A stretch of 63,727 nt of DNA, the filler included, from Hyphochytrium catenoides (lineage: Eukaryota; Protista; Hyphochytriomycota), in assembly GCA_900088475.1 (NCBI GenBank). It is 10 parts of 10 records of this genome, joined end to end, with 100 filler letters (N's around TTAATTAATTAA, not from the genome) between each part and the next. Parts side by side here need not be neighbours in the genome. Positions count along the whole stretch, not along the records: positions 16,775 to 25,204 come from FLMG01003962.1; 9 more parts are not named here. The stretch is one strand, 5' to 3'. The notes below the pieces were generated by a model. That model searched no databases and had not been told where the DNA came from. It saw nothing but the letters and a program-made list of their open reading frames with translations. Below, piece after piece: positions 16,775-25,574 of the stretch (its first letter is position 1; every line of letters begins with the position of its first letter). Both the position numbers and the translations under genes were made by a program.

Positions 16775-17294
16775 GATCTGACTAGGCTTTGGGCTACTTC
16801 TGGCATCGGCTGTTGCGCAACCGGCCCCACTCGAGTCATTCTAGGATGGCGTTGACACATACTAAGTAAGATACACTGAGGACGACGATACCTTCAGACA
16901 AACAGACAGACAACGAGAGCGACACAAGGAGGAGAGATGAGCTACGCTTCCGAGAGAAAAAAAAAATAAAAATAGGTGGACACAGAGAGAGAAGGCTGGA
17001 TCGCTACTGCCTTGTCGACGCTAGATGGGGCAGACGGGGAAAACGGACACGAATTTTCAAAGGCAAAAATGCCAACGACGACGCAGTGGGGAAGCTTCTG
17101 TTAGGATTGCCTGTTACCTGGACCCAATCCTCTATCACAAGCTTTGGGAGAACCGCGTCAATAATGGCGAGGCCGTCCTGCTCCTCATTTGCTGACACCT
17201 CATCTCCTACAAGGACCCATTCCTCAGAGCTCTCACCTCCGCCAGTTGTTGCACCCTTTATTTTGCTACGAGAGTCTTCCGCGTGGGACATCAT
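16775..17294 (-). CDS. Possible 5' end of an unknown protein (exon 17294-17118; probable further exon running into the gap)
   Basis: MMSHAEDSRSKIKGATTGGGESSEEWVLVGDEVSANEEQDGLAIIDAVLPKLVIEDWVQ ends at CAG|GTAACA; the sequence is protein-like, with no family recognised. Confidence 0.4.
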
Positions 17295-18301
17295 CCTTAG
17301 AGAGTGGGATAGCGAGCCCGTTGGTGATAGGCTAGCAAAGGATGGGGCAATTGGAGGGGCAAGTGGCAGATATTTCGACGAAGGTTGCAGATTCTCCGGA
17401 TCCGCCTGAATAACGACTAAGTTGTCTAAGGGATTGTGCCGTAGCGATAGGCTAGAGAGCGCTTGGAGAAAGGGACACCGACGCCAGCTAGGCAGACAGA
17501 TTGTAGAGGGCGAGGGCGACAGGGACAAGCGCCGCCGAGAGCAAGACAGTAGGTCGACAAAGCCTACGGACGCCGGGGATGAGCCTTTCCAGCAGACAAG
17601 GGAAGACGAGAGACACAATTTGATGTCGGCAGTGGCTATAAAACTAAGATCAACAAAAGAACCGAGCGTTGGCGAAGTAAAGAGCCAACTAATATCCGTT
17701 GTTCCCCGTCTGTTGAGCTCCGAGCAAGCTGTCCTTCCGTGTCCCGATGACAAGTCTCTTCCCAATCTTCAACTGCAGATGCCGACCGACATTTTATAAA
17801 CGCGACTTCGAAAAGAAATGAACCAAAGTCGTTCTTTTCGGTTTTTTAATTTCGTACCGTCAGTGCTAGTGCACTGTTCTTTGCTTACCTCTACCGTTTA
17901 GAATCCGATGGGTTGAGGAGGCTTAAGATTGGACTCTGTCTCGACTTTATTTCCTCGTACGTGAACTTTGGGTCTAGGACACCGTTACACAAGCTTGTAC
18001 ACTCTGTAATGTAGTTTGTTAAGAGTTGTAGCTCTCATTGTGTTGGTTCTTTATCTGCAGCACTTCTTTTTTTATCTTTTTTATCTCGCGCTCCCATTGT
18101 CTCCCCTCTCTTCGGCTACAGTTCTACTCTCTGTCTCTGTCTTTCTCCGGTCTCTGTCTCTGTCTTTCTCCGGTCTCTGTCTCTGTCTCTCTCTCTGTAT
18201 TTATATTGTTGACGTGCCATTCGCAGATTCTTCGAGCTTTAGAAAGCTAGGATAGCGCGATCCGTCAGGAAAGGGCATTGCGATGCTGAAGGCCATCGCG
18301 T

Positions 18302-18557
18302 GTGTGCGCGGAGTGTAGAGATTGTGCCATAAGTATCTTCTTCATGTCCCGGCGCGAACTGTGTGGCAAGCAAGTTGTTGGAGAATACGTCGTACGCTGA
18401 AGATAGCGACGACTATCCGTCCGCAAGCAAGTCCCTCATCACAGACCCCTCGAAGCGTACGACGTATGCTTCTCCACCAGCCTGCTGGTCACACAGTCCC
18501 CGGCGGGACATGAAGATACCTTTCAAAAGATGGCACAAGTCTACACCCCACTCACAC
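18302..18557. repeat. Imperfect inverted repeat (arms ~18302-18398 and ~18454-18557)
   Basis: The reverse complement of the right arm aligns with the left arm (ttcatgtcccg / cgggacatgaa; tacgtcgtacgct / agcgtacgacgta). Confidence 0.9.
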
Positions 18558-18705
18558 TAAGCTTCTTATGTCCTTAATCTTGGCATCGCAATAGTGTGCA
18601 GCACGATTGCCCCCTGTCGAGAAGAGACTGTGGGAGCGGATGTGAGCATATGGTGGCTGCATGGGTGAAGGTTTCTGGCCTAGTGCATTGTCGTGCCACC
18701 GATGT

Positions 18706-20670
18706 TGAGAGACAGGCACTGGCTTCTCTAAGTCGAGGAAAGCGCCCACTCATGGTCTCGACGACAGCGCATGCTTTCTAAAGACGGAGGCACCGATGCT
18801 CATATAGACGGTATGTCCTTGTGTTTGTGCGCTATTAGCAGCTATTCTTTGCTGGGCAAACAAAGGCTGGGAACGGACGCACGGTAGCTGCTTAAAGTCA
18901 CCCGCGAAGAGTATGTGATGGCCGGCAAAGAGTCTTTCAGAAGCGCATGCGAAGGTTCTAGTTGCTTCCTCAAAGTATCCCAAGAGTTGAGCTGGCACTA
19001 TTGATATGTCATCAATAATGTGCAGCACAATTTCCGCTTGCTGTTGCTTTTGAGAGACTGTGCGAGCGGATGTGACCATGTGTGGCTGCATGGGTGAAGA
19101 TTCCTGGCCGAGTGCATTGTCGTGCCACCGATGTTGAGCACAGCGGTGGTTAGATATGCAGTTGCTTCTACGGCCTGGGCTCTTCCCATCTTTCTGCTAG
19201 AGCCTTACGGATAGCCGTTGACTTTCCTCTGCAGGGCCCTCCTCCAAGAAAAAATTATCGCCTGCTTGTCGAGAGGCGCGTGCTACTGCTGAGGGAGTGC
19301 TTGGTCTGCTTCCTCCTTATGTCCAGGTAGGGTCACAAAGAAACCGATACATGAGAGGTTTGCCTATGAAAACTATCGCTCGATGCTGCGTCTCGTCGGC
19401 ACGGAAAGCCTCCTGGGAGCTCTGCGGATAGTCGCACAGAGAGGGGAAGAGTCTCTGGATCTTGAGGTGGGGTGTCCGGTGACATTTGCCCTGCTGACGT
19501 TGACGCTGTTGACTGTTCACTTGTCACCATTCGAGATATTATTCATTAGTTCTTGGTGGTGTGAAGGTCGGAGCAGCAGCGTGTGTGAGCAGGGTAGTAT
19601 AGAATTGTGCCATTTTTGGAAAAAGGTATCTTTATTACGCTGAAGAGAGCATCTACAACGATCCGTCCGCAAGCAAGCCCCTCACATACCCCTCGAAGCG
19701 TACAACGTATTCTCCAACAACCTGCTGGCCACACAGTTTCGGCCGGGACATGAAGATACCTTTAAAAAAATGGCATAATTCTACACCCTCCCGCTCACAC
19801 ACGCTGCTCCAACCTTCATCACCACCAAGAACAAATGAATAATATCTCGAATAGAAGTGAACAATCAACAGCGTCAACGCCAGCATGCCGCAATACGTCC
19901 TACGCGCCTTAATGGAGTTCGCTATCTACAGCAGCCAGCACCATGGCAAATGCCGCCAGACACTCCACCTCAAGATCCAGAGACTCGTCCTCTATATGCG
20001 GCTATCTCACAGATCTCCCAGGGGTTTCCGTGCCGACGACACGCAGCATTGAGCGATAGTTTTCATAGGCAAACCTCTCATGTATCGGTCTCTATGTGAC
20101 CCTGGACATAAGGAGGAAGCAGACCAAGCACTCACTCAGCAGCAGCACGCGCCTCTCAACAAGCAGGCTATAATGTTTCTTGGGGGAGGGCTTGGTTGGC
20201 AGAGGCGAGTCAGCCGGTATTCACGCATTAAAGGCTCTAGCAGAATGATGGGGAAGACCCCAAGCCGTAGAAGCAAGTGCATATCTAACCACCGCTGCGC
20301 TCGAGATCGGTGGCACGACAATGCACTCGGCCAGAAACCTTCACCCATGCAGCCACCACATGCTCACATTTGCTCCCACATTCTCTCAAAGCCAACAGGA
20401 AGAAGCAGCCATCGTGCTGCACATTATTGATGAGATATCAATAGTGCCAGCTCAACTCTTGGGAAACTTTGAGGAAGCAAGTAGAACCTTTGCATGCGCT
20501 TCTGACAGACTCTTTGCCGGACATCACATACTCTTCGCGGGTTACTTTTAGCAACTACCGTGCGTCCGTTAGCATCGTGCCTCCGTCTTCTTAGAAGAAA
20601 ACATGCGCGGTCGTGGTGACCCTGAGTGGGCGCTTCCTCGAGTTAGAGAAGCCACCAGTGCCTCTCTCTC
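18706..20670. repeat. Large imperfect palindrome (arms ~18706-19632 and ~19753-20670)
   Basis: Collinear reverse-complement matches along about 0.9 kb, e.g. ttcgagatattattcatt / aatgaataatatctcgaa, tggatcttgaggtgg / ccacctcaagatcca, caagagttgagctggcactattgatat / atatcaatagtgccagctcaactcttg. Confidence 0.93.
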
Positions 20671-20671
20671 A

Positions 20672-21870
20672 GCAACACTGAGATATATCAACGCGACACG
20701 AATCCAGTTACCTTAGGATAGCGCGCCAAGATTCATTCTTCCAATTGCTATTACCCTCCACAAGGTATCCCTTGCATATTTCGTTGAAAATAGCCGCTCA
20801 TTCGTGTCTGCCCTAGGTCGTTGCGCAGTCAACTTCCAGTTAACAGCTTTGTTATTCTACAATTGCCACCAGCCAAGAAGCCCACTGTCTATCAATGGGA
20901 CGCGGAGATAACGTCAAGAGAAGACTATCCCATCATCAGCTCACTTCGCCATCTTCCAGACTACGTTACTGGGAGAGTCTGCATGTCACTCGAGACCTAC
21001 TCAGGTAAACTCTATACTGCCCATATGCATTGCCCCTTGCATTCACAAAGCGAGAAGGCGTGCACATCCAAATAGTACCAAACATTTTCTGGGGCGCTCG
21101 GTGTGGGCAACGGAGACAAAGTGTAGCTTGTGGAAGTACGGGGTTGTGGTCTTACTTCTATTATGTGTTTTGCTGGAGGTACGAGAAGATAGCCACTCGG
21201 AAGTCCAGGGTAGTGGGGTTGTTCTGCTCTTGATTCGCAGGGTTTGATAGGACATAGTCTGCCACCTTTCACCAAGAGCGACCTTCCACCAAGGGCGAGA
21301 ACTAGCCCCAAGCCACACAGTGCAGCAGCTACGGAAGGTGGTGCCAGACTATATTCTGATCAAACTCTGCGAACCAAGAGCAGAACAACCCCACTACCCT
21401 GGACTTCCGAGTGGCTATCTGCTCCTACCTCCAGCAAAACAGAAGATAGAAATAAAGTCACAACCCCCGCCATAGCGCCTTCCGCATAAGTGTCTTCCAG
21501 CATGTTATCAGACCGGCCTTCGCTCTCACACCTGAGAACTTACAGGGAGGCACATACGTCGGTGTCGTCGGAGATGATGCAGTCTCTCCCAGTAACGTAG
21601 TCGAGAAGATGGCGGAGTGAGCTAATGTGATAGGCTGCTCTTGACCTTATCTCCGCGTCCCACTGATAGGCAGTAGGTCTCCTGGTCTGCTGGCAGTTGT
21701 TGAATGACGAAGCGTGTTACCTGGACGATGACTGCACAACGCACCTAGGGGAAACATGAATTAGGGGTTAGATGCTAGCGATAGTATGTTGAGGGTGATA
21801 GCGATGGGAATATATTTTGAGACGCCCTGAGGAAGTGGATCCGTCTCGCGTTAAGATATCATAGATGTTG
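20672..21870. repeat. Imperfect palindrome centred ~21300 (inner arms ~21139-21270 and ~21333-21468; outer arms ~20672-21007 and ~21530-21870)
   Basis: Perfect 46-bp stem 21187-21232 vs 21375-21420; outer matches gactacgttactgggagag / ctctcccagtaacgtagtc and tgggacgcggagataa / ttatctccgcgtccca. Confidence 0.93.
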
Positions 21871-24800
21871 GATCTGCAACAGTTAACGGAACTCAGATAA
21901 AATCGGTTCGTCCTTCTTTACAGCTCATGAGGATCTGCTGCACAGGTCACCCGAGGAGGCAGGAAGTTTATGGTCTCACCTACCAGCTGTGTCCTCTTTC
22001 TTTTTCACCGCTTCTTTCTTTGCCTTCGTTGATGATGTCCTTGAACTCCTGAATAAAGAGGATGGACTTTACCAACCGTATTGTTCTCATCATCATCTGC
22101 ATCCGGCTCAAAGGTTGGCAGATTGTGATGCCGCCGTACAGTCTAGTCTGGTCTGTACGGTGGTCTGATGGCTGCTGATTAGCTTGGTTTAGCTTCTCTT
22201 GTAAGCCTTGGTTTCGGCTCTCATCTGCTCGACAAGAAGGTCAGTGAACTGGCAGACTGTTTTCATCTAAGCCAGGATTTGCTAAAGGGTGTTGTGATTC
22301 TCTCGCTGCAGCATATGGATTCCAGGGTTGCGGGTGCTTGTGCGGCTGCAGTTAGGCGGGCTGTTGGTTTCAGCGTCGACTGGTGGGCTTGTGTCCTCAG
22401 GTTGCGGGGTGTTTGGCCCCACGCACTCCCTCCATCAGTGTTGTTGGGGTGCTCCTCTTATTGTTGAGCTTCATTAGGATTGCGGGTGGTTGCTCCTCTT
22501 TTGGAAGGCATCCTCGCTTTAGATTGACGGGAACTGAGAGGTAAGGAGGAACGCAGAGGTCAGTGGTCTCAGCAGAGTTCTGCGCGCACGGCGGCGATGC
22601 GCCATCCATGTAAGGTCAGAATGGCTGGAGAAAAGTCAGAATCGCATTATGTTAGGGCGCTCTTCTTCCAGTAGTTAATGCGAAGTGGGAAAGATCTCAT
22701 TCTGGGTCCCGGGACTTGGAGGATGCCTGACGTGGGGCCTCACACCCCTGACACTACTATTTGCCTGGAAGGCGTTAGCGAAACAAGAGGATTAGCCCAC
22801 TTCTTGGAGTCTGGAAGAGCCAAGAACAGAGAAGCAATGCATAGCGAAGCCAGACAAAGACAACAAGGAAGGAAGCAGCACAAACACGCAAAGAAACATG
22901 TGAAGGCCTTACAACTCTGGATACTCATGAGAAGAAGAACACTAGAAGTAGGTTCAAGCAAGGTGTAGGAGCAAGCAGCAGATGGTTCAGAAGCAAGACA
23001 ACTATAATATAAGAACAACGGCATTTGCCCCATGATCTGGTACAACTACTTGTAGGAGATCCTAGGCGGTTGGCACTTCAAGCGACATTCCTAGGAGACA
23101 CTGGTTTGACAGATAGAACAGAAGCACTGGACTAGATACTCTGGGTTAAACCTAGTGATCACTTCTTTGGACAAGAACATTGAGGCAGCCCACCAACACC
23201 GAAGCCACAAGAAGTCCAGGTTTGAGCTCAGCAGCTTCCCACACACATCTTTTGTTTCTCCATTGTGGAAGCAGAGAGGCAAAGCTGGCTGGCCCTTCCC
23301 GTCTCCTCCATTATCGCTGTGGCAGGATGTGGGGTTTCATCCTCTTTTCTGCACCAAAGTTCTGCTTTTATCGGTACCTGTCAGTGGAAAGGTTAGAGGG
23401 CTAAATAATAGTGGAAAGGATTTTGTTGAAGCAGCAGCAGCAGCACCGCGCGCAGACAGGATCTAGAAGAAGAAAGTCTTGAGGGAGAAACGAGGTAGGC
23501 GCCACTGTTGGGGCGGCATTGCTGCCAACATCATCATGGCTGCAAGAAGGGACGCTACAGAATAATAACAAAGAAGGCAGTGTGTCTGAGAAGAAGGCAT
23601 ACTACGATGATGATGGTAGTAATGTGGAATAGCAGCTTTAGCAGAGCAGTGCACGCCGCCTGAAAAGAATGAAGAATCAGCGAACCCTTCCTCCTGAGTG
23701 ATGGCGCCGGGGAGGTAGTGAGGGGGAGGAGGATCCACACAGCCAGTCATGATCAAAAAGGAGGAGTCCAATGGATTAGGGAAGAGGAAGCCGCAGCATT
23801 ACATAGAGCAGCATACTTTACAATGTATGGTGCCGTAGAGGGCGAAGCATGACATACAAATCATACTAAGATAGGCAGAAGAAGGAGGCAAATGCAAGCA
23901 AAACAGCCGAGCACCAAAGCAAGCAGCAGTCACCAGAGGAGACTCGAGAAAGACCCACAGCCGTACAAAAGAGAGGAGAAGAAAGCACGCCAAGACAGAC
24001 GAGGTTGTCGTGGCGTCTCTCCTCCTCGGCGATAAGCAGCAGCAGCCCCCGCACAACGACCTATCCACTAGTACTATATATATTACAATGCGGCCACCAG
24101 CAGCAGCCGAGCAATGGTGAGCAACGCACTCCAACTCCACGAGAAGACGTGTGTTGCTCAGTAGGCAATGACTAATAGACGCTTGTGATAATGGAATATT
24201 ATAGGTGATGAAATAGAAGAGGCTTACTATTCTCTGGTCAAGGAAGGAAGAGATCCAAGACACGACGGCGTAGAGAGAAAAAAAGAACTAGAGAGGGAAA
24301 GAGGGAGAGAGAAAGAGAAAGAGAGATTGAAAGGGAGAGCCATTGCGGAGCGAGACAGAGACGACAGGTAGACAGGCAAGCGAATATGAAGCCAAAGAAG
24401 AAGAACTTCACCTTCTTCAATCCTCTGCGCTCCCCGCCGCCATGTCCTCCTCCTCCGCAGCAGACAGTGAATGGATCCCTTACCTCGAGGAAGAGTGAGG
24501 AAGAGAGCAGATCTTCGCGGTGGACTTGTGATAGATTGAGAAGAGACAGAGGAGAGGATGACATACGGATGGTGATGATATGGGGCTGCTGGGCGATGGC
24601 GCTGTATACTTCTTCTTCTTATCTTCTTCTTCTCTCTCCTCTCTCTTTTGGTTTCGGTGTCTATCATCTTCGGTGTCTCCACCATAACTCCTTTTGTCCT
24701 GCTAAGCTCTCTTCTCTCTCTCCTTGTCATGCTCTCTCTCTCTCCTTGTCATGTTCTGTCTCTCTCTCTCTCTCCTCTCTCTCTCCTTCTCTCTCTCTTT

Positions 24801-25574
24801 AGTCTATCGTTTCACTAGTCATGCCTCTAATTGTAGACGCGTAGAGAAGAAGAATATCTTTCTCTAATATCCAGGAGGGCAAAGACAGAAGAAAGAGAGA
24901 GAGAAGAAGAAGGAGGCCATCTTGTTAGACACAAGGACAGGAAGGGAGCAGAGGGTGATGGCGAGGACAGGGAAAGAGCCAGAAAGATTCTGAGAAGACT
25001 GGGCGGAGAAGATGTGTTGCCGGTTCACAGAAGAGAAGGGCAAAATAGGGAGTCTTGGGCTGAAGAAAAGTAGAAGAAACAAAGAGGGAAGGGGAAGAAG
25101 AAGATGGATCGTAAGAAAGATAAGAGAAGAAAAGAGAGGAGAGGAGAGGCTCGAGGCTGAGGATGATGCGAGGAGCTAGAGAGAGAGAGAGAGAAAGAGA
25201 GAGANNNNNNNNNNNNNNNNNNNNNNNNNNNNNNNNNNNNNNNNNNNNTTAATTAATTAANNNNNNNNNNNNNNNNNNNNNNNNNNNNNNNNNNNNNNNN
25301 NNNNTCTCTCTCCCCCTCTCTCCCTCTAATTCTTTCTTTTTCTCCCTGCCTCTCTCTCTGTCTATTATCGTCATCCTCCCCTCCAGACTGCTCCTTTCTT
25401 CCCTTCCTCTAGTTTTTGGCTTCTCTCGACAAGCAGTAAAATCTCCATCGTGTCCTTGCCCTCTGAAGGCTTCTCTCTCTTTTGCACCCCTCTTCTTCTC
25501 CTCCCTTCTCCTCCCTGTCTTGATATTGTCGCTCAAACATATTTTCCGGCCTCCTCTCTATCTACATCGCACAG

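What the first reader, a model, noticed from the sequence alone, without database searches (positions are those of the whole stretch)
18302..21870. Three back-to-back fold-back palindromes around a dead PIF1/Helitron helicase: candidate hairpin-RNA silencing locus
Seen: about 3.6 kb is almost fully self-complementary as three consecutive hairpins (~0.25, ~2.0 and ~1.2 kb). Nearly every segment of a decayed plus-strand helicase (~19950-21470) has an antisense copy placed so that one transcript would fold on itself. The arms differ by many substitutions and indels (roughly 80-85% identity by eye), so this is old and not an amplification chimera. Established: long imperfect hairpin transcripts feed Dicer to make endo-siRNAs in flies, plants and fungi. 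Inference: a transposon-derived hairpin array that silences Helitron-like elements, or a fossil of repeated template switching during rolling-circle/hairpin replication.
Basis: partly seen in the sequence, partly recalled or inferred. Interest (0 to 1): 0.8.

Follow-up and report, generated by a model that had tools for sequence, protein, structure and literature searches.

The report
Fold-back duplications of dead Helitron helicase
A broken piece of a jumping-gene (Helitron-type) helicase has been copied back-to-front onto itself several times, so 3.6 kb of DNA could fold into long hairpins; the copies look like decaying by-products of copying errors at short inverted repeats, not a demonstrated RNA-silencing gene.

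Summary
Window 18298-21870 is strongly self-complementary: self-blastn gives E=0, 1.5e-66 and 8e-51. An RNA of either strand would fold at about -2300 kcal/mol, against about -1170 for shuffles.

The anatomy is more complex than three hairpins. A single plus-strand PIF1/Helitron-type helicase pseudogene (H, 19697-21576) is surrounded and interrupted by five inverted copies and one direct copy of its own parts. The small hairpin is a direct duplicate of the big hairpin's apex. The third hairpin is two nested inverted duplications with unrelated spacers.

Three segment ends (H ~20432, 20673, 20674) fall in the loops of the only two short inverted repeats with stems of at least 6 bp in H. One junction has 7 nt of microhomology. 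This points to fold-back priming or template switching.

- Both helicase copies are dead, through different lesions.
- Arm mismatches show no G:U bias (37 vs 38).
- There is no significant codon-phase bias.
- Arm divergence is 9-20% with many indels.

So the best reading is a neutral fossil of repeated fold-back duplication. Any read-through transcript would be a plausible Dicer substrate, as with maize Mu killer. Expression, small RNAs, targets and even the host organism could not be tested.

The parts
18298..18398 (-). S1: inverted copy of the start of the helicase fragment (H 19697-19804). It is the left arm of the small hairpin.
   Evidence: 78% identity to 19697-19804, inverted. (94.8% in ungapped columns).
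18393..18566 (+). S2: direct duplicate of the big hairpin's apex spacer plus the start of H (19636-19808). It contains the 55-nt loop of the small hairpin (18399-18453) and its right arm.
   Evidence: 81-82% identity, direct orientation. One search gives K2P 0.14.
18589..18709 (-). S3: extra inverted copy of H 20300-~20432 (helicase motif Ia region). Its left end lies in the loop of the short inverted repeat at 20425-20443. Its right end joins S4 through a 7-nt microhomology.
   Evidence: 82-92% identity. (junction sequences).
18703..19635 (-). S4: left arm of the big hairpin, an inverted copy of H 19750-20674. It encodes the N-terminal half of a PIF1-type helicase on the minus strand. It keeps the Walker A GKST motif, the IIDDIS motif and the GDFKQLP motif, and it keeps 71 nt (18801-18871) that H has lost. 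It has 2-3 frameshifts.
   Evidence: Pfam PIF1, E 1.9e-5. (custom HMM, E 2e-22)..
19636..19696 (.). Spacer (loop) at the apex of the big hairpin. The left arm has lost about 55 nt next to it, relative to the small hairpin.
19697..21139 (+). S5: main plus-strand helicase pseudogene, first part. It runs from the upstream linker through Walker A (GKS changed to GES), motif II and motif III (interrupted by a stop). It has two further in-frame stops and a 71-nt deletion. It then continues through segment X (20673-20984) and spacer s1 (20985-21139).
   Evidence: tblastn, E 7e-21 to relative P0013. (HMM, E 8e-16)..
21140..21303 (-). S6: inverted duplicate of the adjacent segment Y (21304-21467), inserted into the helicase reading direction. 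The paired cores are 21140-21248 and 21359-21467, with about 110 nt of loop that contains a 17-nt tandem repeat.
   Evidence: I3: 109 nt, 90%.. (K2P 0.12)..
21304..21576 (+). S7: continuation of the plus-strand helicase, made of Y plus spacer s2. It holds the C-terminal helicase region (UvrD_C_2 / motif V-VI region) at 21341-21569, with a frameshift.
   Evidence: L001 product residues 229-303, E 3e-4. (P0023 and P0021, weak but collinear). (HMM, E 0.007).
21577..21870 (-). S8: inverted copy of X (H 20673-20984), the right outer arm of the third hairpin. Its right end (H 20673) abuts unrelated flank and coincides with the left end of S4 (H 20674).
   Evidence: 75% identity, E 8e-51. (K2P 0.20)..
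20667..20683 (.). Short inverted repeat 'p' (6-bp stem, 5-nt loop). Both S4 and S8 end in its loop.
20425..20443 (.). Short inverted repeat (7-bp stem, 5-nt loop). S3 ends in its loop.

Best explanation
The locus is a non-functional fossil. A 5'-truncated fragment of a Helitron-type Rep-helicase gene, with only the PIF1-like helicase part left, underwent several local fold-back (inverted) duplications. These were started where a DNA 3' end or nascent strand folded back or switched template at short inverted repeats. Small direct duplications, a templated filler insertion and deletions at the unstable new palindrome centres followed. All copies have since decayed neutrally.

Shown directly: the segment map; the coincidence of breakpoints with short inverted repeats; the microhomology; the independent inactivating lesions; the lack of any pairing-preserving bias.

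Inferred: the mechanism (fold-back or ODIRA-like template switching followed by centre deletions); at least two rounds of events; neutrality.

Because of its shape, any transcript crossing the locus on either strand would form long double-stranded RNA. It could incidentally feed an RNAi pathway if the host has one.
For: - One collinear helicase copy (H) lies on the + strand. Five inverted copies and one direct copy of parts of H lie around and inside it.
- The spacers of the third hairpin are unrelated, so it arose from separate inverted duplications rather than one fold.
- H (1880 nt) contains only two short inverted repeats with a stem of at least 6 bp and a loop of 3-10 nt. Positions within 2 nt of their loops make up 1.1% of H. 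Three of about 10-12 segment ends fall there: S3 at ~20432, S4 at 20674, S8 at 20673. My own rough binomial estimate for this is about 1e-3.
- The S3/S4 junction shows 7-nt microhomology.
- The lesions differ between the arms. The + copy has Walker A Lys changed to Glu, three in-frame stops and a 71-nt deletion. The - copy has frameshifts.
- No Rep domain is present anywhere in the piece.
- G:U versus A:C mismatches are 37 vs 38. The transition/transversion ratio is about 1. Indels are frequent.
- Mismatches by codon position over the whole helicase N-half are 11/8/16, p=0.09.
- The longest perfect stem (49 bp) is within what random mismatch spacing would give (my calculation).
- Divergence differs between repeat pairs: K2P 0.09 for the big arms against 0.20 for X/S8. 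This indicates more than one event.
Against: - At all three breakpoints that lie in short inverted repeats, the expected partner arm is missing. Extra deletions therefore have to be assumed. Cleavage at hairpin loops, rather than template switching, would explain the coincidence equally well.
- In the best ungapped 274 nt of the helicase, mismatches cluster at third codon positions (5/4/12, p=0.02; 8 synonymous against 11 non-synonymous codons). That would fit two once-functional source copies. The signal fades over the full region.
- Neutrality is argued from one sequence only. No orthologous or paralogous loci could be found.
- Lack of function cannot be shown without expression data.
Confidence: 0.6

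Rival explanations
1. A working hairpin-RNA (endo-siRNA) locus of the Mu killer or Drosophila hpRNA type. Read-through transcription of the inverted helicase copies would give long dsRNA. Dicer would cut it into siRNAs that silence active Helitrons of the same family. The fold-back origin would be the same as in the best explanation, but the locus would be retained for this function.
For: - Either strand would fold into about 0.8 paired fraction, with 13-15 perfect helices of 19-54 bp.
- About 77% of the helicase fragment has an antisense partner in cis.
- The precedent is well established. [quoted passage not shown]
- Ac/Ds inverted duplications made by alternative transposition start siRNA silencing (bioRxiv 10.1101/2020.01.07.897926).
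- Drosophila hpRNAs suppress selfish genes (PMC10317233).
Against: - There is no G:U wobble bias on either strand (37 vs 38).
- The arms have diverged 9-20% with dense indels, and there is no sign of arm-to-arm gene conversion.
- No flanking gene or promoter could be recognised.
- No possible target is known. The closest helicases in 1.8 billion representative proteins are only 35-47% identical. Searches for close relatives found nothing.
- Helitron relatives examined elsewhere carry no such inverted repeats.
- The host, and so its RNAi capacity, is unknown.
Confidence: 0.2
2. The large palindrome was not made in place. Two different, once-active copies of the same Helitron family inserted head-to-head. 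A symmetric central deletion typical of unstable palindromes then removed both Rep parts. The smaller pieces are later debris.
For: - Third-codon-position excess and about 40% synonymous codon changes between the arms in the best-aligned 274 nt.
- In-frame length differences around Walker A.
- No inactivating lesion is shared by the two arms.
Against: - The codon-phase signal is not significant over the whole coding overlap.
- Both arms stop at the same internal point of the gene, next to the same spacer. That spacer-plus-junction exists a second time as a direct duplicate.
- The breakpoints at short inverted repeats and the small inverted pieces S3, S6 and S8 are not explained by insertions.
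Confidence: 0.1
3. An artefact of sequencing or assembly: an amplification chimera, a long-read fold-back read, or mis-joined repeat copies.
For: Fold-back chimeras are a known artefact. The piece could not be found in any searchable collection for an independent copy.
Against: - Chimeric artefacts give near-identical arms. Here the arms differ by 9-20% substitutions and by indels of up to 71 nt that are consistent with the coding frame.
- The lesions are independent. The indels are mostly 2-6 nt rather than single-base.
- Eight differently bounded segments with nested order would need many independent mis-joins.
Confidence: 0.05

Closest known systems
Maize Mu killer (Muk): natural inverted duplication of a partial MuDR transposase gene
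   Same: Both are a truncated transposon gene fragment duplicated in inverted orientation, so a read-through transcript is a kilobase-scale hairpin. Neither has a functional protein. Both are potentially trans-acting on intact family members (PMC3440606).
   Different: Muk is genetically proven to silence MuDR, has near-identical arms and has a known flanking promoter. Here the arms are 9-20% diverged, the structure is a mosaic of eight segments, the transposon is a Helitron-type element, and there are no expression, target or host data.
Fold-back inversions and ODIRA inverted triplications (yeast, human CNVs)
   Same: Inverted duplications whose junctions sit at short, closely spaced inverted repeats. 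Orientation alternates forward-inverted-forward. Secondary rearrangements widen the gap between arms (PMC10766183; PMC7467729 and PMC3907307).
   Different: Those events span kilobases to megabases and are caught fresh. Here the segments are 0.1-1 kb and old, and the partner arm at each short-inverted-repeat junction is missing. No origin of replication or selective amplification is evident.
Drosophila hpRNA loci and plant inverted-duplication proto-miRNA or siRNA loci
   Same: A long imperfect inverted repeat derived from the target gene family, which is a predicted Dicer substrate (PMC10317233 and PMC3237417).
   Different: Those are defined by small-RNA evidence and by conserved or recently born, highly complementary arms. 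None of that is available here.
Helitron Rep-helicase (RepHel) proteins, PIF1-like helicase family PF05970
   Same: The best relatives carry Helitron_like_N plus PIF1 domains (P0021, P0033, and the L001 contig). Walker A, motif II and motif III are recognisable.
   Different: Only the helicase part is present. There is no Rep, no recognisable termini, many stops and frameshifts, and at most 47% identity to anything known.

Membership tests
PIF1-like helicase (Pfam PF05970) | Significant match to the family profile | tested here: met
   The single 113-aa ORF scores 24.8 bits, E 1.9e-5, just under the 25.9-bit gathering cut-off. An HMM built from five relatives gives E 2e-22 for the - copy and 8e-16 for the + copy. 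tblastn with P0013 gives E 7e-21. PDB PIF1 helicases match at E 0.004.
PIF1-like helicase (Pfam PF05970) | Intact catalytic motifs and an open reading frame (a working enzyme) | tested here: not met
   The + copy has Walker A GKS changed to GES, stops at three in-frame positions, a 71-nt deletion and a frameshift before the C-terminal part. The - copy has 2-3 frameshifts and lacks the C-terminal half.
Helitron (autonomous element) | HUH Rep endonuclease domain N-terminal to the helicase | tested here: not met
   tblastn with the Rep-containing products of L001, P0021 and P0033 finds no Rep-like stretch in 16775-25204.
Helitron (autonomous element) | Helicase most similar to the RepHel helicases of Helitrons | tested here: met
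   The best tblastn relative, P0013, lies in a contig directly downstream of a Helitron_like_N gene. P0021 and P0033 combine Helitron_like_N and PIF1. Cellular PIF1 structures match far more weakly.
Helitron (autonomous element) | 5'-TC and CTRR-3' termini with a subterminal 3' hairpin, inserted at an AT site | not tested
   The fragment is truncated at both ends by the rearrangements, and no family consensus is available to locate termini.
Hairpin-RNA / endo-siRNA locus (Mu killer or hpRNA type) | Long inverted repeat able to form dsRNA with helices of at least 21 bp | tested here: met
   minimum free energy about twice that of shuffles, with 8-14 helices of at least 21 bp, up to 49-54 bp.
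Hairpin-RNA / endo-siRNA locus (Mu killer or hpRNA type) | Transcription through the repeat and Dicer-sized small RNAs from the stems | not testable with these tools
   There are no expression data, and the source organism is unknown.
Hairpin-RNA / endo-siRNA locus (Mu killer or hpRNA type) | Existence of near-identical target genes or elements | tested here: inconclusive
   No relative above ~47% amino-acid identity in the protein libraries, and no close locus in the metagenome collection. The source genome itself could not be searched.
Hairpin-RNA / endo-siRNA locus (Mu killer or hpRNA type) | Signs that pairing is preserved (G:U bias, compensatory change, arm homogenisation). This is supportive evidence, not strictly a defining feature. 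| tested here: not met
   G:U 37 against A:C 38 on the + strand. Arm divergence 9-20%, with 25 gap events per 741 aligned nt.
Fold-back inversion / ODIRA-type inverted duplication | Inverted-duplication junctions located at short, closely spaced inverted repeats | tested here: met
   Three segment ends lie in the loops of the only two short inverted repeats with stems of at least 6 bp in H.
Fold-back inversion / ODIRA-type inverted duplication | Both arms present and meeting at the short inverted repeat; forward-inverted-forward triplication | tested here: inconclusive
   Orientation alternates along the locus (S1 to S8). At each short-inverted-repeat junction, however, the partner arm is absent, so secondary deletions must be assumed.

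The most novel reading that the evidence does not exclude
A naturally arisen, Mu killer-like 'Helitron killer'. In an unidentified, probably protist, eukaryote, this multi-hairpin array of helicase fragments would be transcribed and diced into siRNAs that keep a lineage-specific Helitron family silent. That would give a first natural example of hairpin-based Helitron control. It would also link replication fold-back errors at short inverted repeats directly to the birth of a genome-defence locus.
Probability: 0.1. Interest if true: 0.55.

Novelty: new member of a known kind. Interest (0 to 1): 0.27.

Why it matters
If the locus is only a fossil, it is still a compact natural record. It shows how short inverted repeats inside a transposon fragment seed successive fold-back duplications at a sub-kilobase scale. 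Such events are normally studied fresh and at much larger scale in yeast and human copy-number variants.

If it is transcribed, it would be another example of the principle behind Mu killer: a rearranged transposon copy becomes the trigger for silencing its own family. Here that would apply to Helitrons, in a lineage without any close database relative.

Neither reading changes current concepts.

Tried and rejected
Identifying the organism or finding other copies (all failed):
- Exact look-up of ten ORF products in the 15-billion-protein collection found none.
- Word-indexed homology searches with a flank ORF and with the helicase ORF found none.
- The search for related loci in the metagenome collection found no confirmed relative.
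- An exact scan for a 21-mer conserved in all three helicase copies found nothing in metagenome, viral or prokaryotic genome contigs.
- The nearest helicase relatives all come from unnamed metagenome contigs.

Other negative searches:
- Rfam: no family matched at gathering score.
- Pfam on ten flank ORFs: nothing meaningful.

Ideas considered and dropped:
- RIP-like mutation is rejected, because the transition/transversion ratio is about 0.8-1.0.
- A single palindrome for the third hairpin is rejected, because its spacers are unrelated.
- Origin from a single event, such as one circular inverted dimer opened at H 20673/4, is disfavoured. X/S8 is about twice as diverged as the big arms: 17.6% against 8.5% mismatches.
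- Purifying selection between the arms was suggestive in 274 nt but is not significant over the full overlap.
- P0001, the top hit of the representative search, is a spurious match to a low-complexity tandem-repeat protein.
- Bacterial promoter and terminator scans were not run, because the sequence looks eukaryotic.
Full report
**Scope.** Only window 16775-25204 is real sequence. All work was confined to it. It is about 50% G+C, has no long ORFs, and carries CT/GA microsatellites at 18128-18198, 24273-24333, 24707-24798 and at the right end. It looks like non-coding eukaryotic DNA, but the organism could not be identified.

- 18872-19635 against 19750-20570: 80% identity over 835 columns including gaps, 754 bits, E=0. 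It continues as 18703-18800 against 20571-20674.
- 21140-21467 is self-complementary (E 1.5e-66).
- 20673-20984 against 21577-21870 (E 8e-51).
- 18298-18398 against 18454-18557 (E 3e-12).

The repeat finder independently reports ungapped arms of up to 168 nt at 92%. Folding 18290-21880 as RNA gives -2284 kcal/mol (+ strand) and -2332 (- strand). Five shuffles give about -1166, and the neighbouring flank gives -0.34 kcal/mol per nt against -0.64 here. Each strand has 13-15 uninterrupted helices of at least 19 bp, the longest 49-54 bp.

**What the repeated sequence is.**
- The 113-aa ORF at 18750-19091 (-) matches Pfam PIF1 at E 1.9e-5. It matches solved PIF1 helicases weakly.
- An exhaustive phmmer search of 1.8 billion representative proteins found 35 hits at E up to 0.001; the real helicase relatives among them are 26-47% identical (the top hit, P0001, is spurious).
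- The longer hits combine Helitron_like_N and PIF1 domains (P0021 and P0033). The best tblastn relative, P0013, sits in a metagenome contig (L001) directly downstream of a Helitron_like_N gene.
- tblastn and a small home-made HMM place the helicase N-terminal half (Walker A to motif III) on the + strand at 20177-20695 and on the - strand at 19159-18771. They place a C-terminal piece (UvrD_C_2 region) on the + strand only, at 21341-21569.
- No Rep domain is present anywhere in the piece.

Both copies are dead, by different lesions. The + copy has Walker A GKS changed to GES, three in-frame stops, a 71-nt deletion and a frameshift. The - copy keeps GKST, IIDDIS and GDFKQLP but needs 2-3 frameshifts and lacks the C-terminal half. 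'Dead PIF1/Helitron helicase' is therefore correct. Membership of an autonomous Helitron fails on the Rep criterion.

**Refined anatomy.** The reference is H, the + strand copy at 19697-21576. H is collinear with relatives once 21140-~21340 is taken out. The locus reads as follows:

| Segment | Window coordinates | Content |
|---|---|---|
| S1 | 18298-18398 | inverted H 19697-19804 |
| loop | 18399-18453 | loop of the small hairpin |
| S2 | 18393-18566 | direct copy of 19636-19808 (overlaps the loop row above) |
| S3 | 18589-18709 | inverted H 20300-~20432 |
| S4 | 18703-19635 | inverted H 19750-20674 |
| spacer | 19636-19696 | apex of the big hairpin |
| S5 | 19697-21139 | forward H, including X (20673-20984) and s1 (20985-21139) |
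| S6 | 21140-21303 | inverted Y |
| S7 | 21304-21576 | forward Y plus s2 |
| S8 | 21577-21870 | inverted X |

- The small hairpin is a direct duplicate of the apex of the big hairpin, spacer included and in the same orientation. The apex of the big hairpin has since lost about 55 nt from its left arm.
- The third hairpin is not a single palindrome. Spacers s1 and s2 are unrelated: local alignment score 9 against a shuffle mean of 8.8. It is two nested inverted duplications: X...S8 and S6.Y.

**Junctions.**
- S4's left end maps to H 20674 and S8's right end to H 20673. S8 plus S4 would therefore form one continuous inverted copy of H 19750-20984.
- That point lies in the 5-nt loop of a 6-bp-stem inverted repeat at 20667-20683.
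- S3's left end lies in the loop of the other short inverted repeat, at 20425-20443.
- These two are the only inverted repeats in the 1880-nt H with a stem of at least 6 bp and a loop of 3-10 nt. Positions within 2 nt of their loops make up 1.1% of H. Three of roughly a dozen segment ends falling there is unlikely by chance (about 1e-3 by my rough binomial estimate).
- The S3/S4 junction overlaps by a 7-nt microhomology.

[quoted passage not shown] This is documented for yeast and human inverted duplications and triplications. Secondary rearrangements that enlarge the gap between the arms are also documented (PMC10766183; PMC7467729 and PMC3907307).

There is a weakness. At each of the three junctions the partner arm is absent, so later deletions from the unstable palindrome centres must be assumed. 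Breakage at hairpin loops is an alternative reading of the same coincidence.

**Age and selection.** Kimura distances in aligned columns:

| Pair | K2P | Aligned nt |
|---|---|---|
| S4/S5 | 0.09 | 741 |
| S6/S7 | 0.12 | 122 |
| S1/S2 | 0.14 | 93 |
| S2/S5 | 0.14 | 167 |
| X/S8 | 0.20 | 290 |

- So there was more than one event, and a single circular intermediate is disfavoured.
- The transition/transversion ratio is about 0.8-1.0, so there is no RIP-like signature.
- Transition mismatches that would be G:U in a + strand RNA number 16+21. Those that would be A:C number 18+20 (binomial p about 1).
- Mismatches in the two best ungapped helicase blocks favour third codon positions (5/4/12, p=0.02). 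Over the whole coding overlap the counts are 11/8/16 (p=0.09). I treat this as unresolved, not as evidence for selection.
- The longest perfect stems are within what random spacing of differences would produce.

**Function.** The structure would certainly give double-stranded RNA if transcribed from either strand. [quoted passage not shown] It is also how Ac/Ds inverted duplications and Drosophila hpRNA loci work (PMC10317233).

Nothing here shows that this locus does so.
- No promoter or flanking gene could be recognised.
- No candidate target exists in any searchable collection.
- The two Helitron relatives with enough sequence carry no such inverted repeats.
- The pairing is decaying at the same pace as the dead coding sequence.

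I therefore rate a neutral fold-back fossil at about 0.6 and a retained silencing locus at about 0.2. Head-to-head insertion of two family members followed by a central deletion is about 0.1. An artefact is about 0.05. The arms are too divergent, with coding-consistent indels of up to 71 nt and independent lesions, for a chimeric read or amplification artefact.

**Novelty and score.** Inverted duplications of transposon fragments, and their potential to seed small RNAs, are well known. What is specific here is the Helitron-type source, the density of eight segments from one 1.9-kb fragment, and the clean coincidence of breakpoints with the only two short inverted repeats. I file it as a new member of a known kind, with interest of about 0.27. 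The most novel reading not excluded is a natural 'Helitron killer' hairpin locus in an uncharacterised eukaryote. I put that at about 0.1 probability, and at about 0.55 interest if true.

Noticed in passing
window 18128-18198, 24273-24333, 24707-24798, 25176-25204: CT/GA-rich microsatellites and short tandem repeats (23-nt and 22-nt units) flank the locus on both sides. They give weak spurious inverted matches between the two flanks.
   Followed up: partly
window 22600-24600: The + strand is strongly purine- and A-rich (AT skew up to +0.48, GC skew up to +0.3) over about 2 kb. There is no long ORF and no Pfam or homology hit. It might be an untranslated region or an intron of an unrecognised gene on one strand.
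   Followed up: no
window 21264-21298: A 17-nt unit repeated 2.1 times lies in the loop of the inner palindrome (S6/S7). This is a small slippage duplication at the palindrome centre.
   Followed up: no
window 21858-21885: Just after S8 ends in the loop sequence of the short inverted repeat, the flank carries that loop's 5-nt complement 6 nt further on, inside a 9-nt near-match (8 of 9) to forward H around 20669-20677. This could be a vestige of a lost forward partner arm, but it is too short to call.
   Followed up: partly
L001-L004 (JGI metagenome contigs; P0013 found on 12 contigs): The same Helitron-like element occurs in several independent metagenome samples. Its gene order is Helitron_like_N gene, 479-aa ORF, PIF1 N-half, then helicase C-half, split into separate called genes. 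It appears to be an abundant, fairly intact Helitron of an uncultured eukaryote. It is about 40% identical to the window's helicase.
   Followed up: partly
P0001 (3021 aa), top hit of the representative search: This is a protein made of about 107-residue tandem repeats. It matched the query in 15 stretches through low-complexity similarity only. It is not a helicase relative.
   Followed up: yes
window 16775-16778: The piece begins with GATC (an MboI/Sau3AI site). This may simply be chance, or it may reflect how the source fragment was generated.
   Followed up: no
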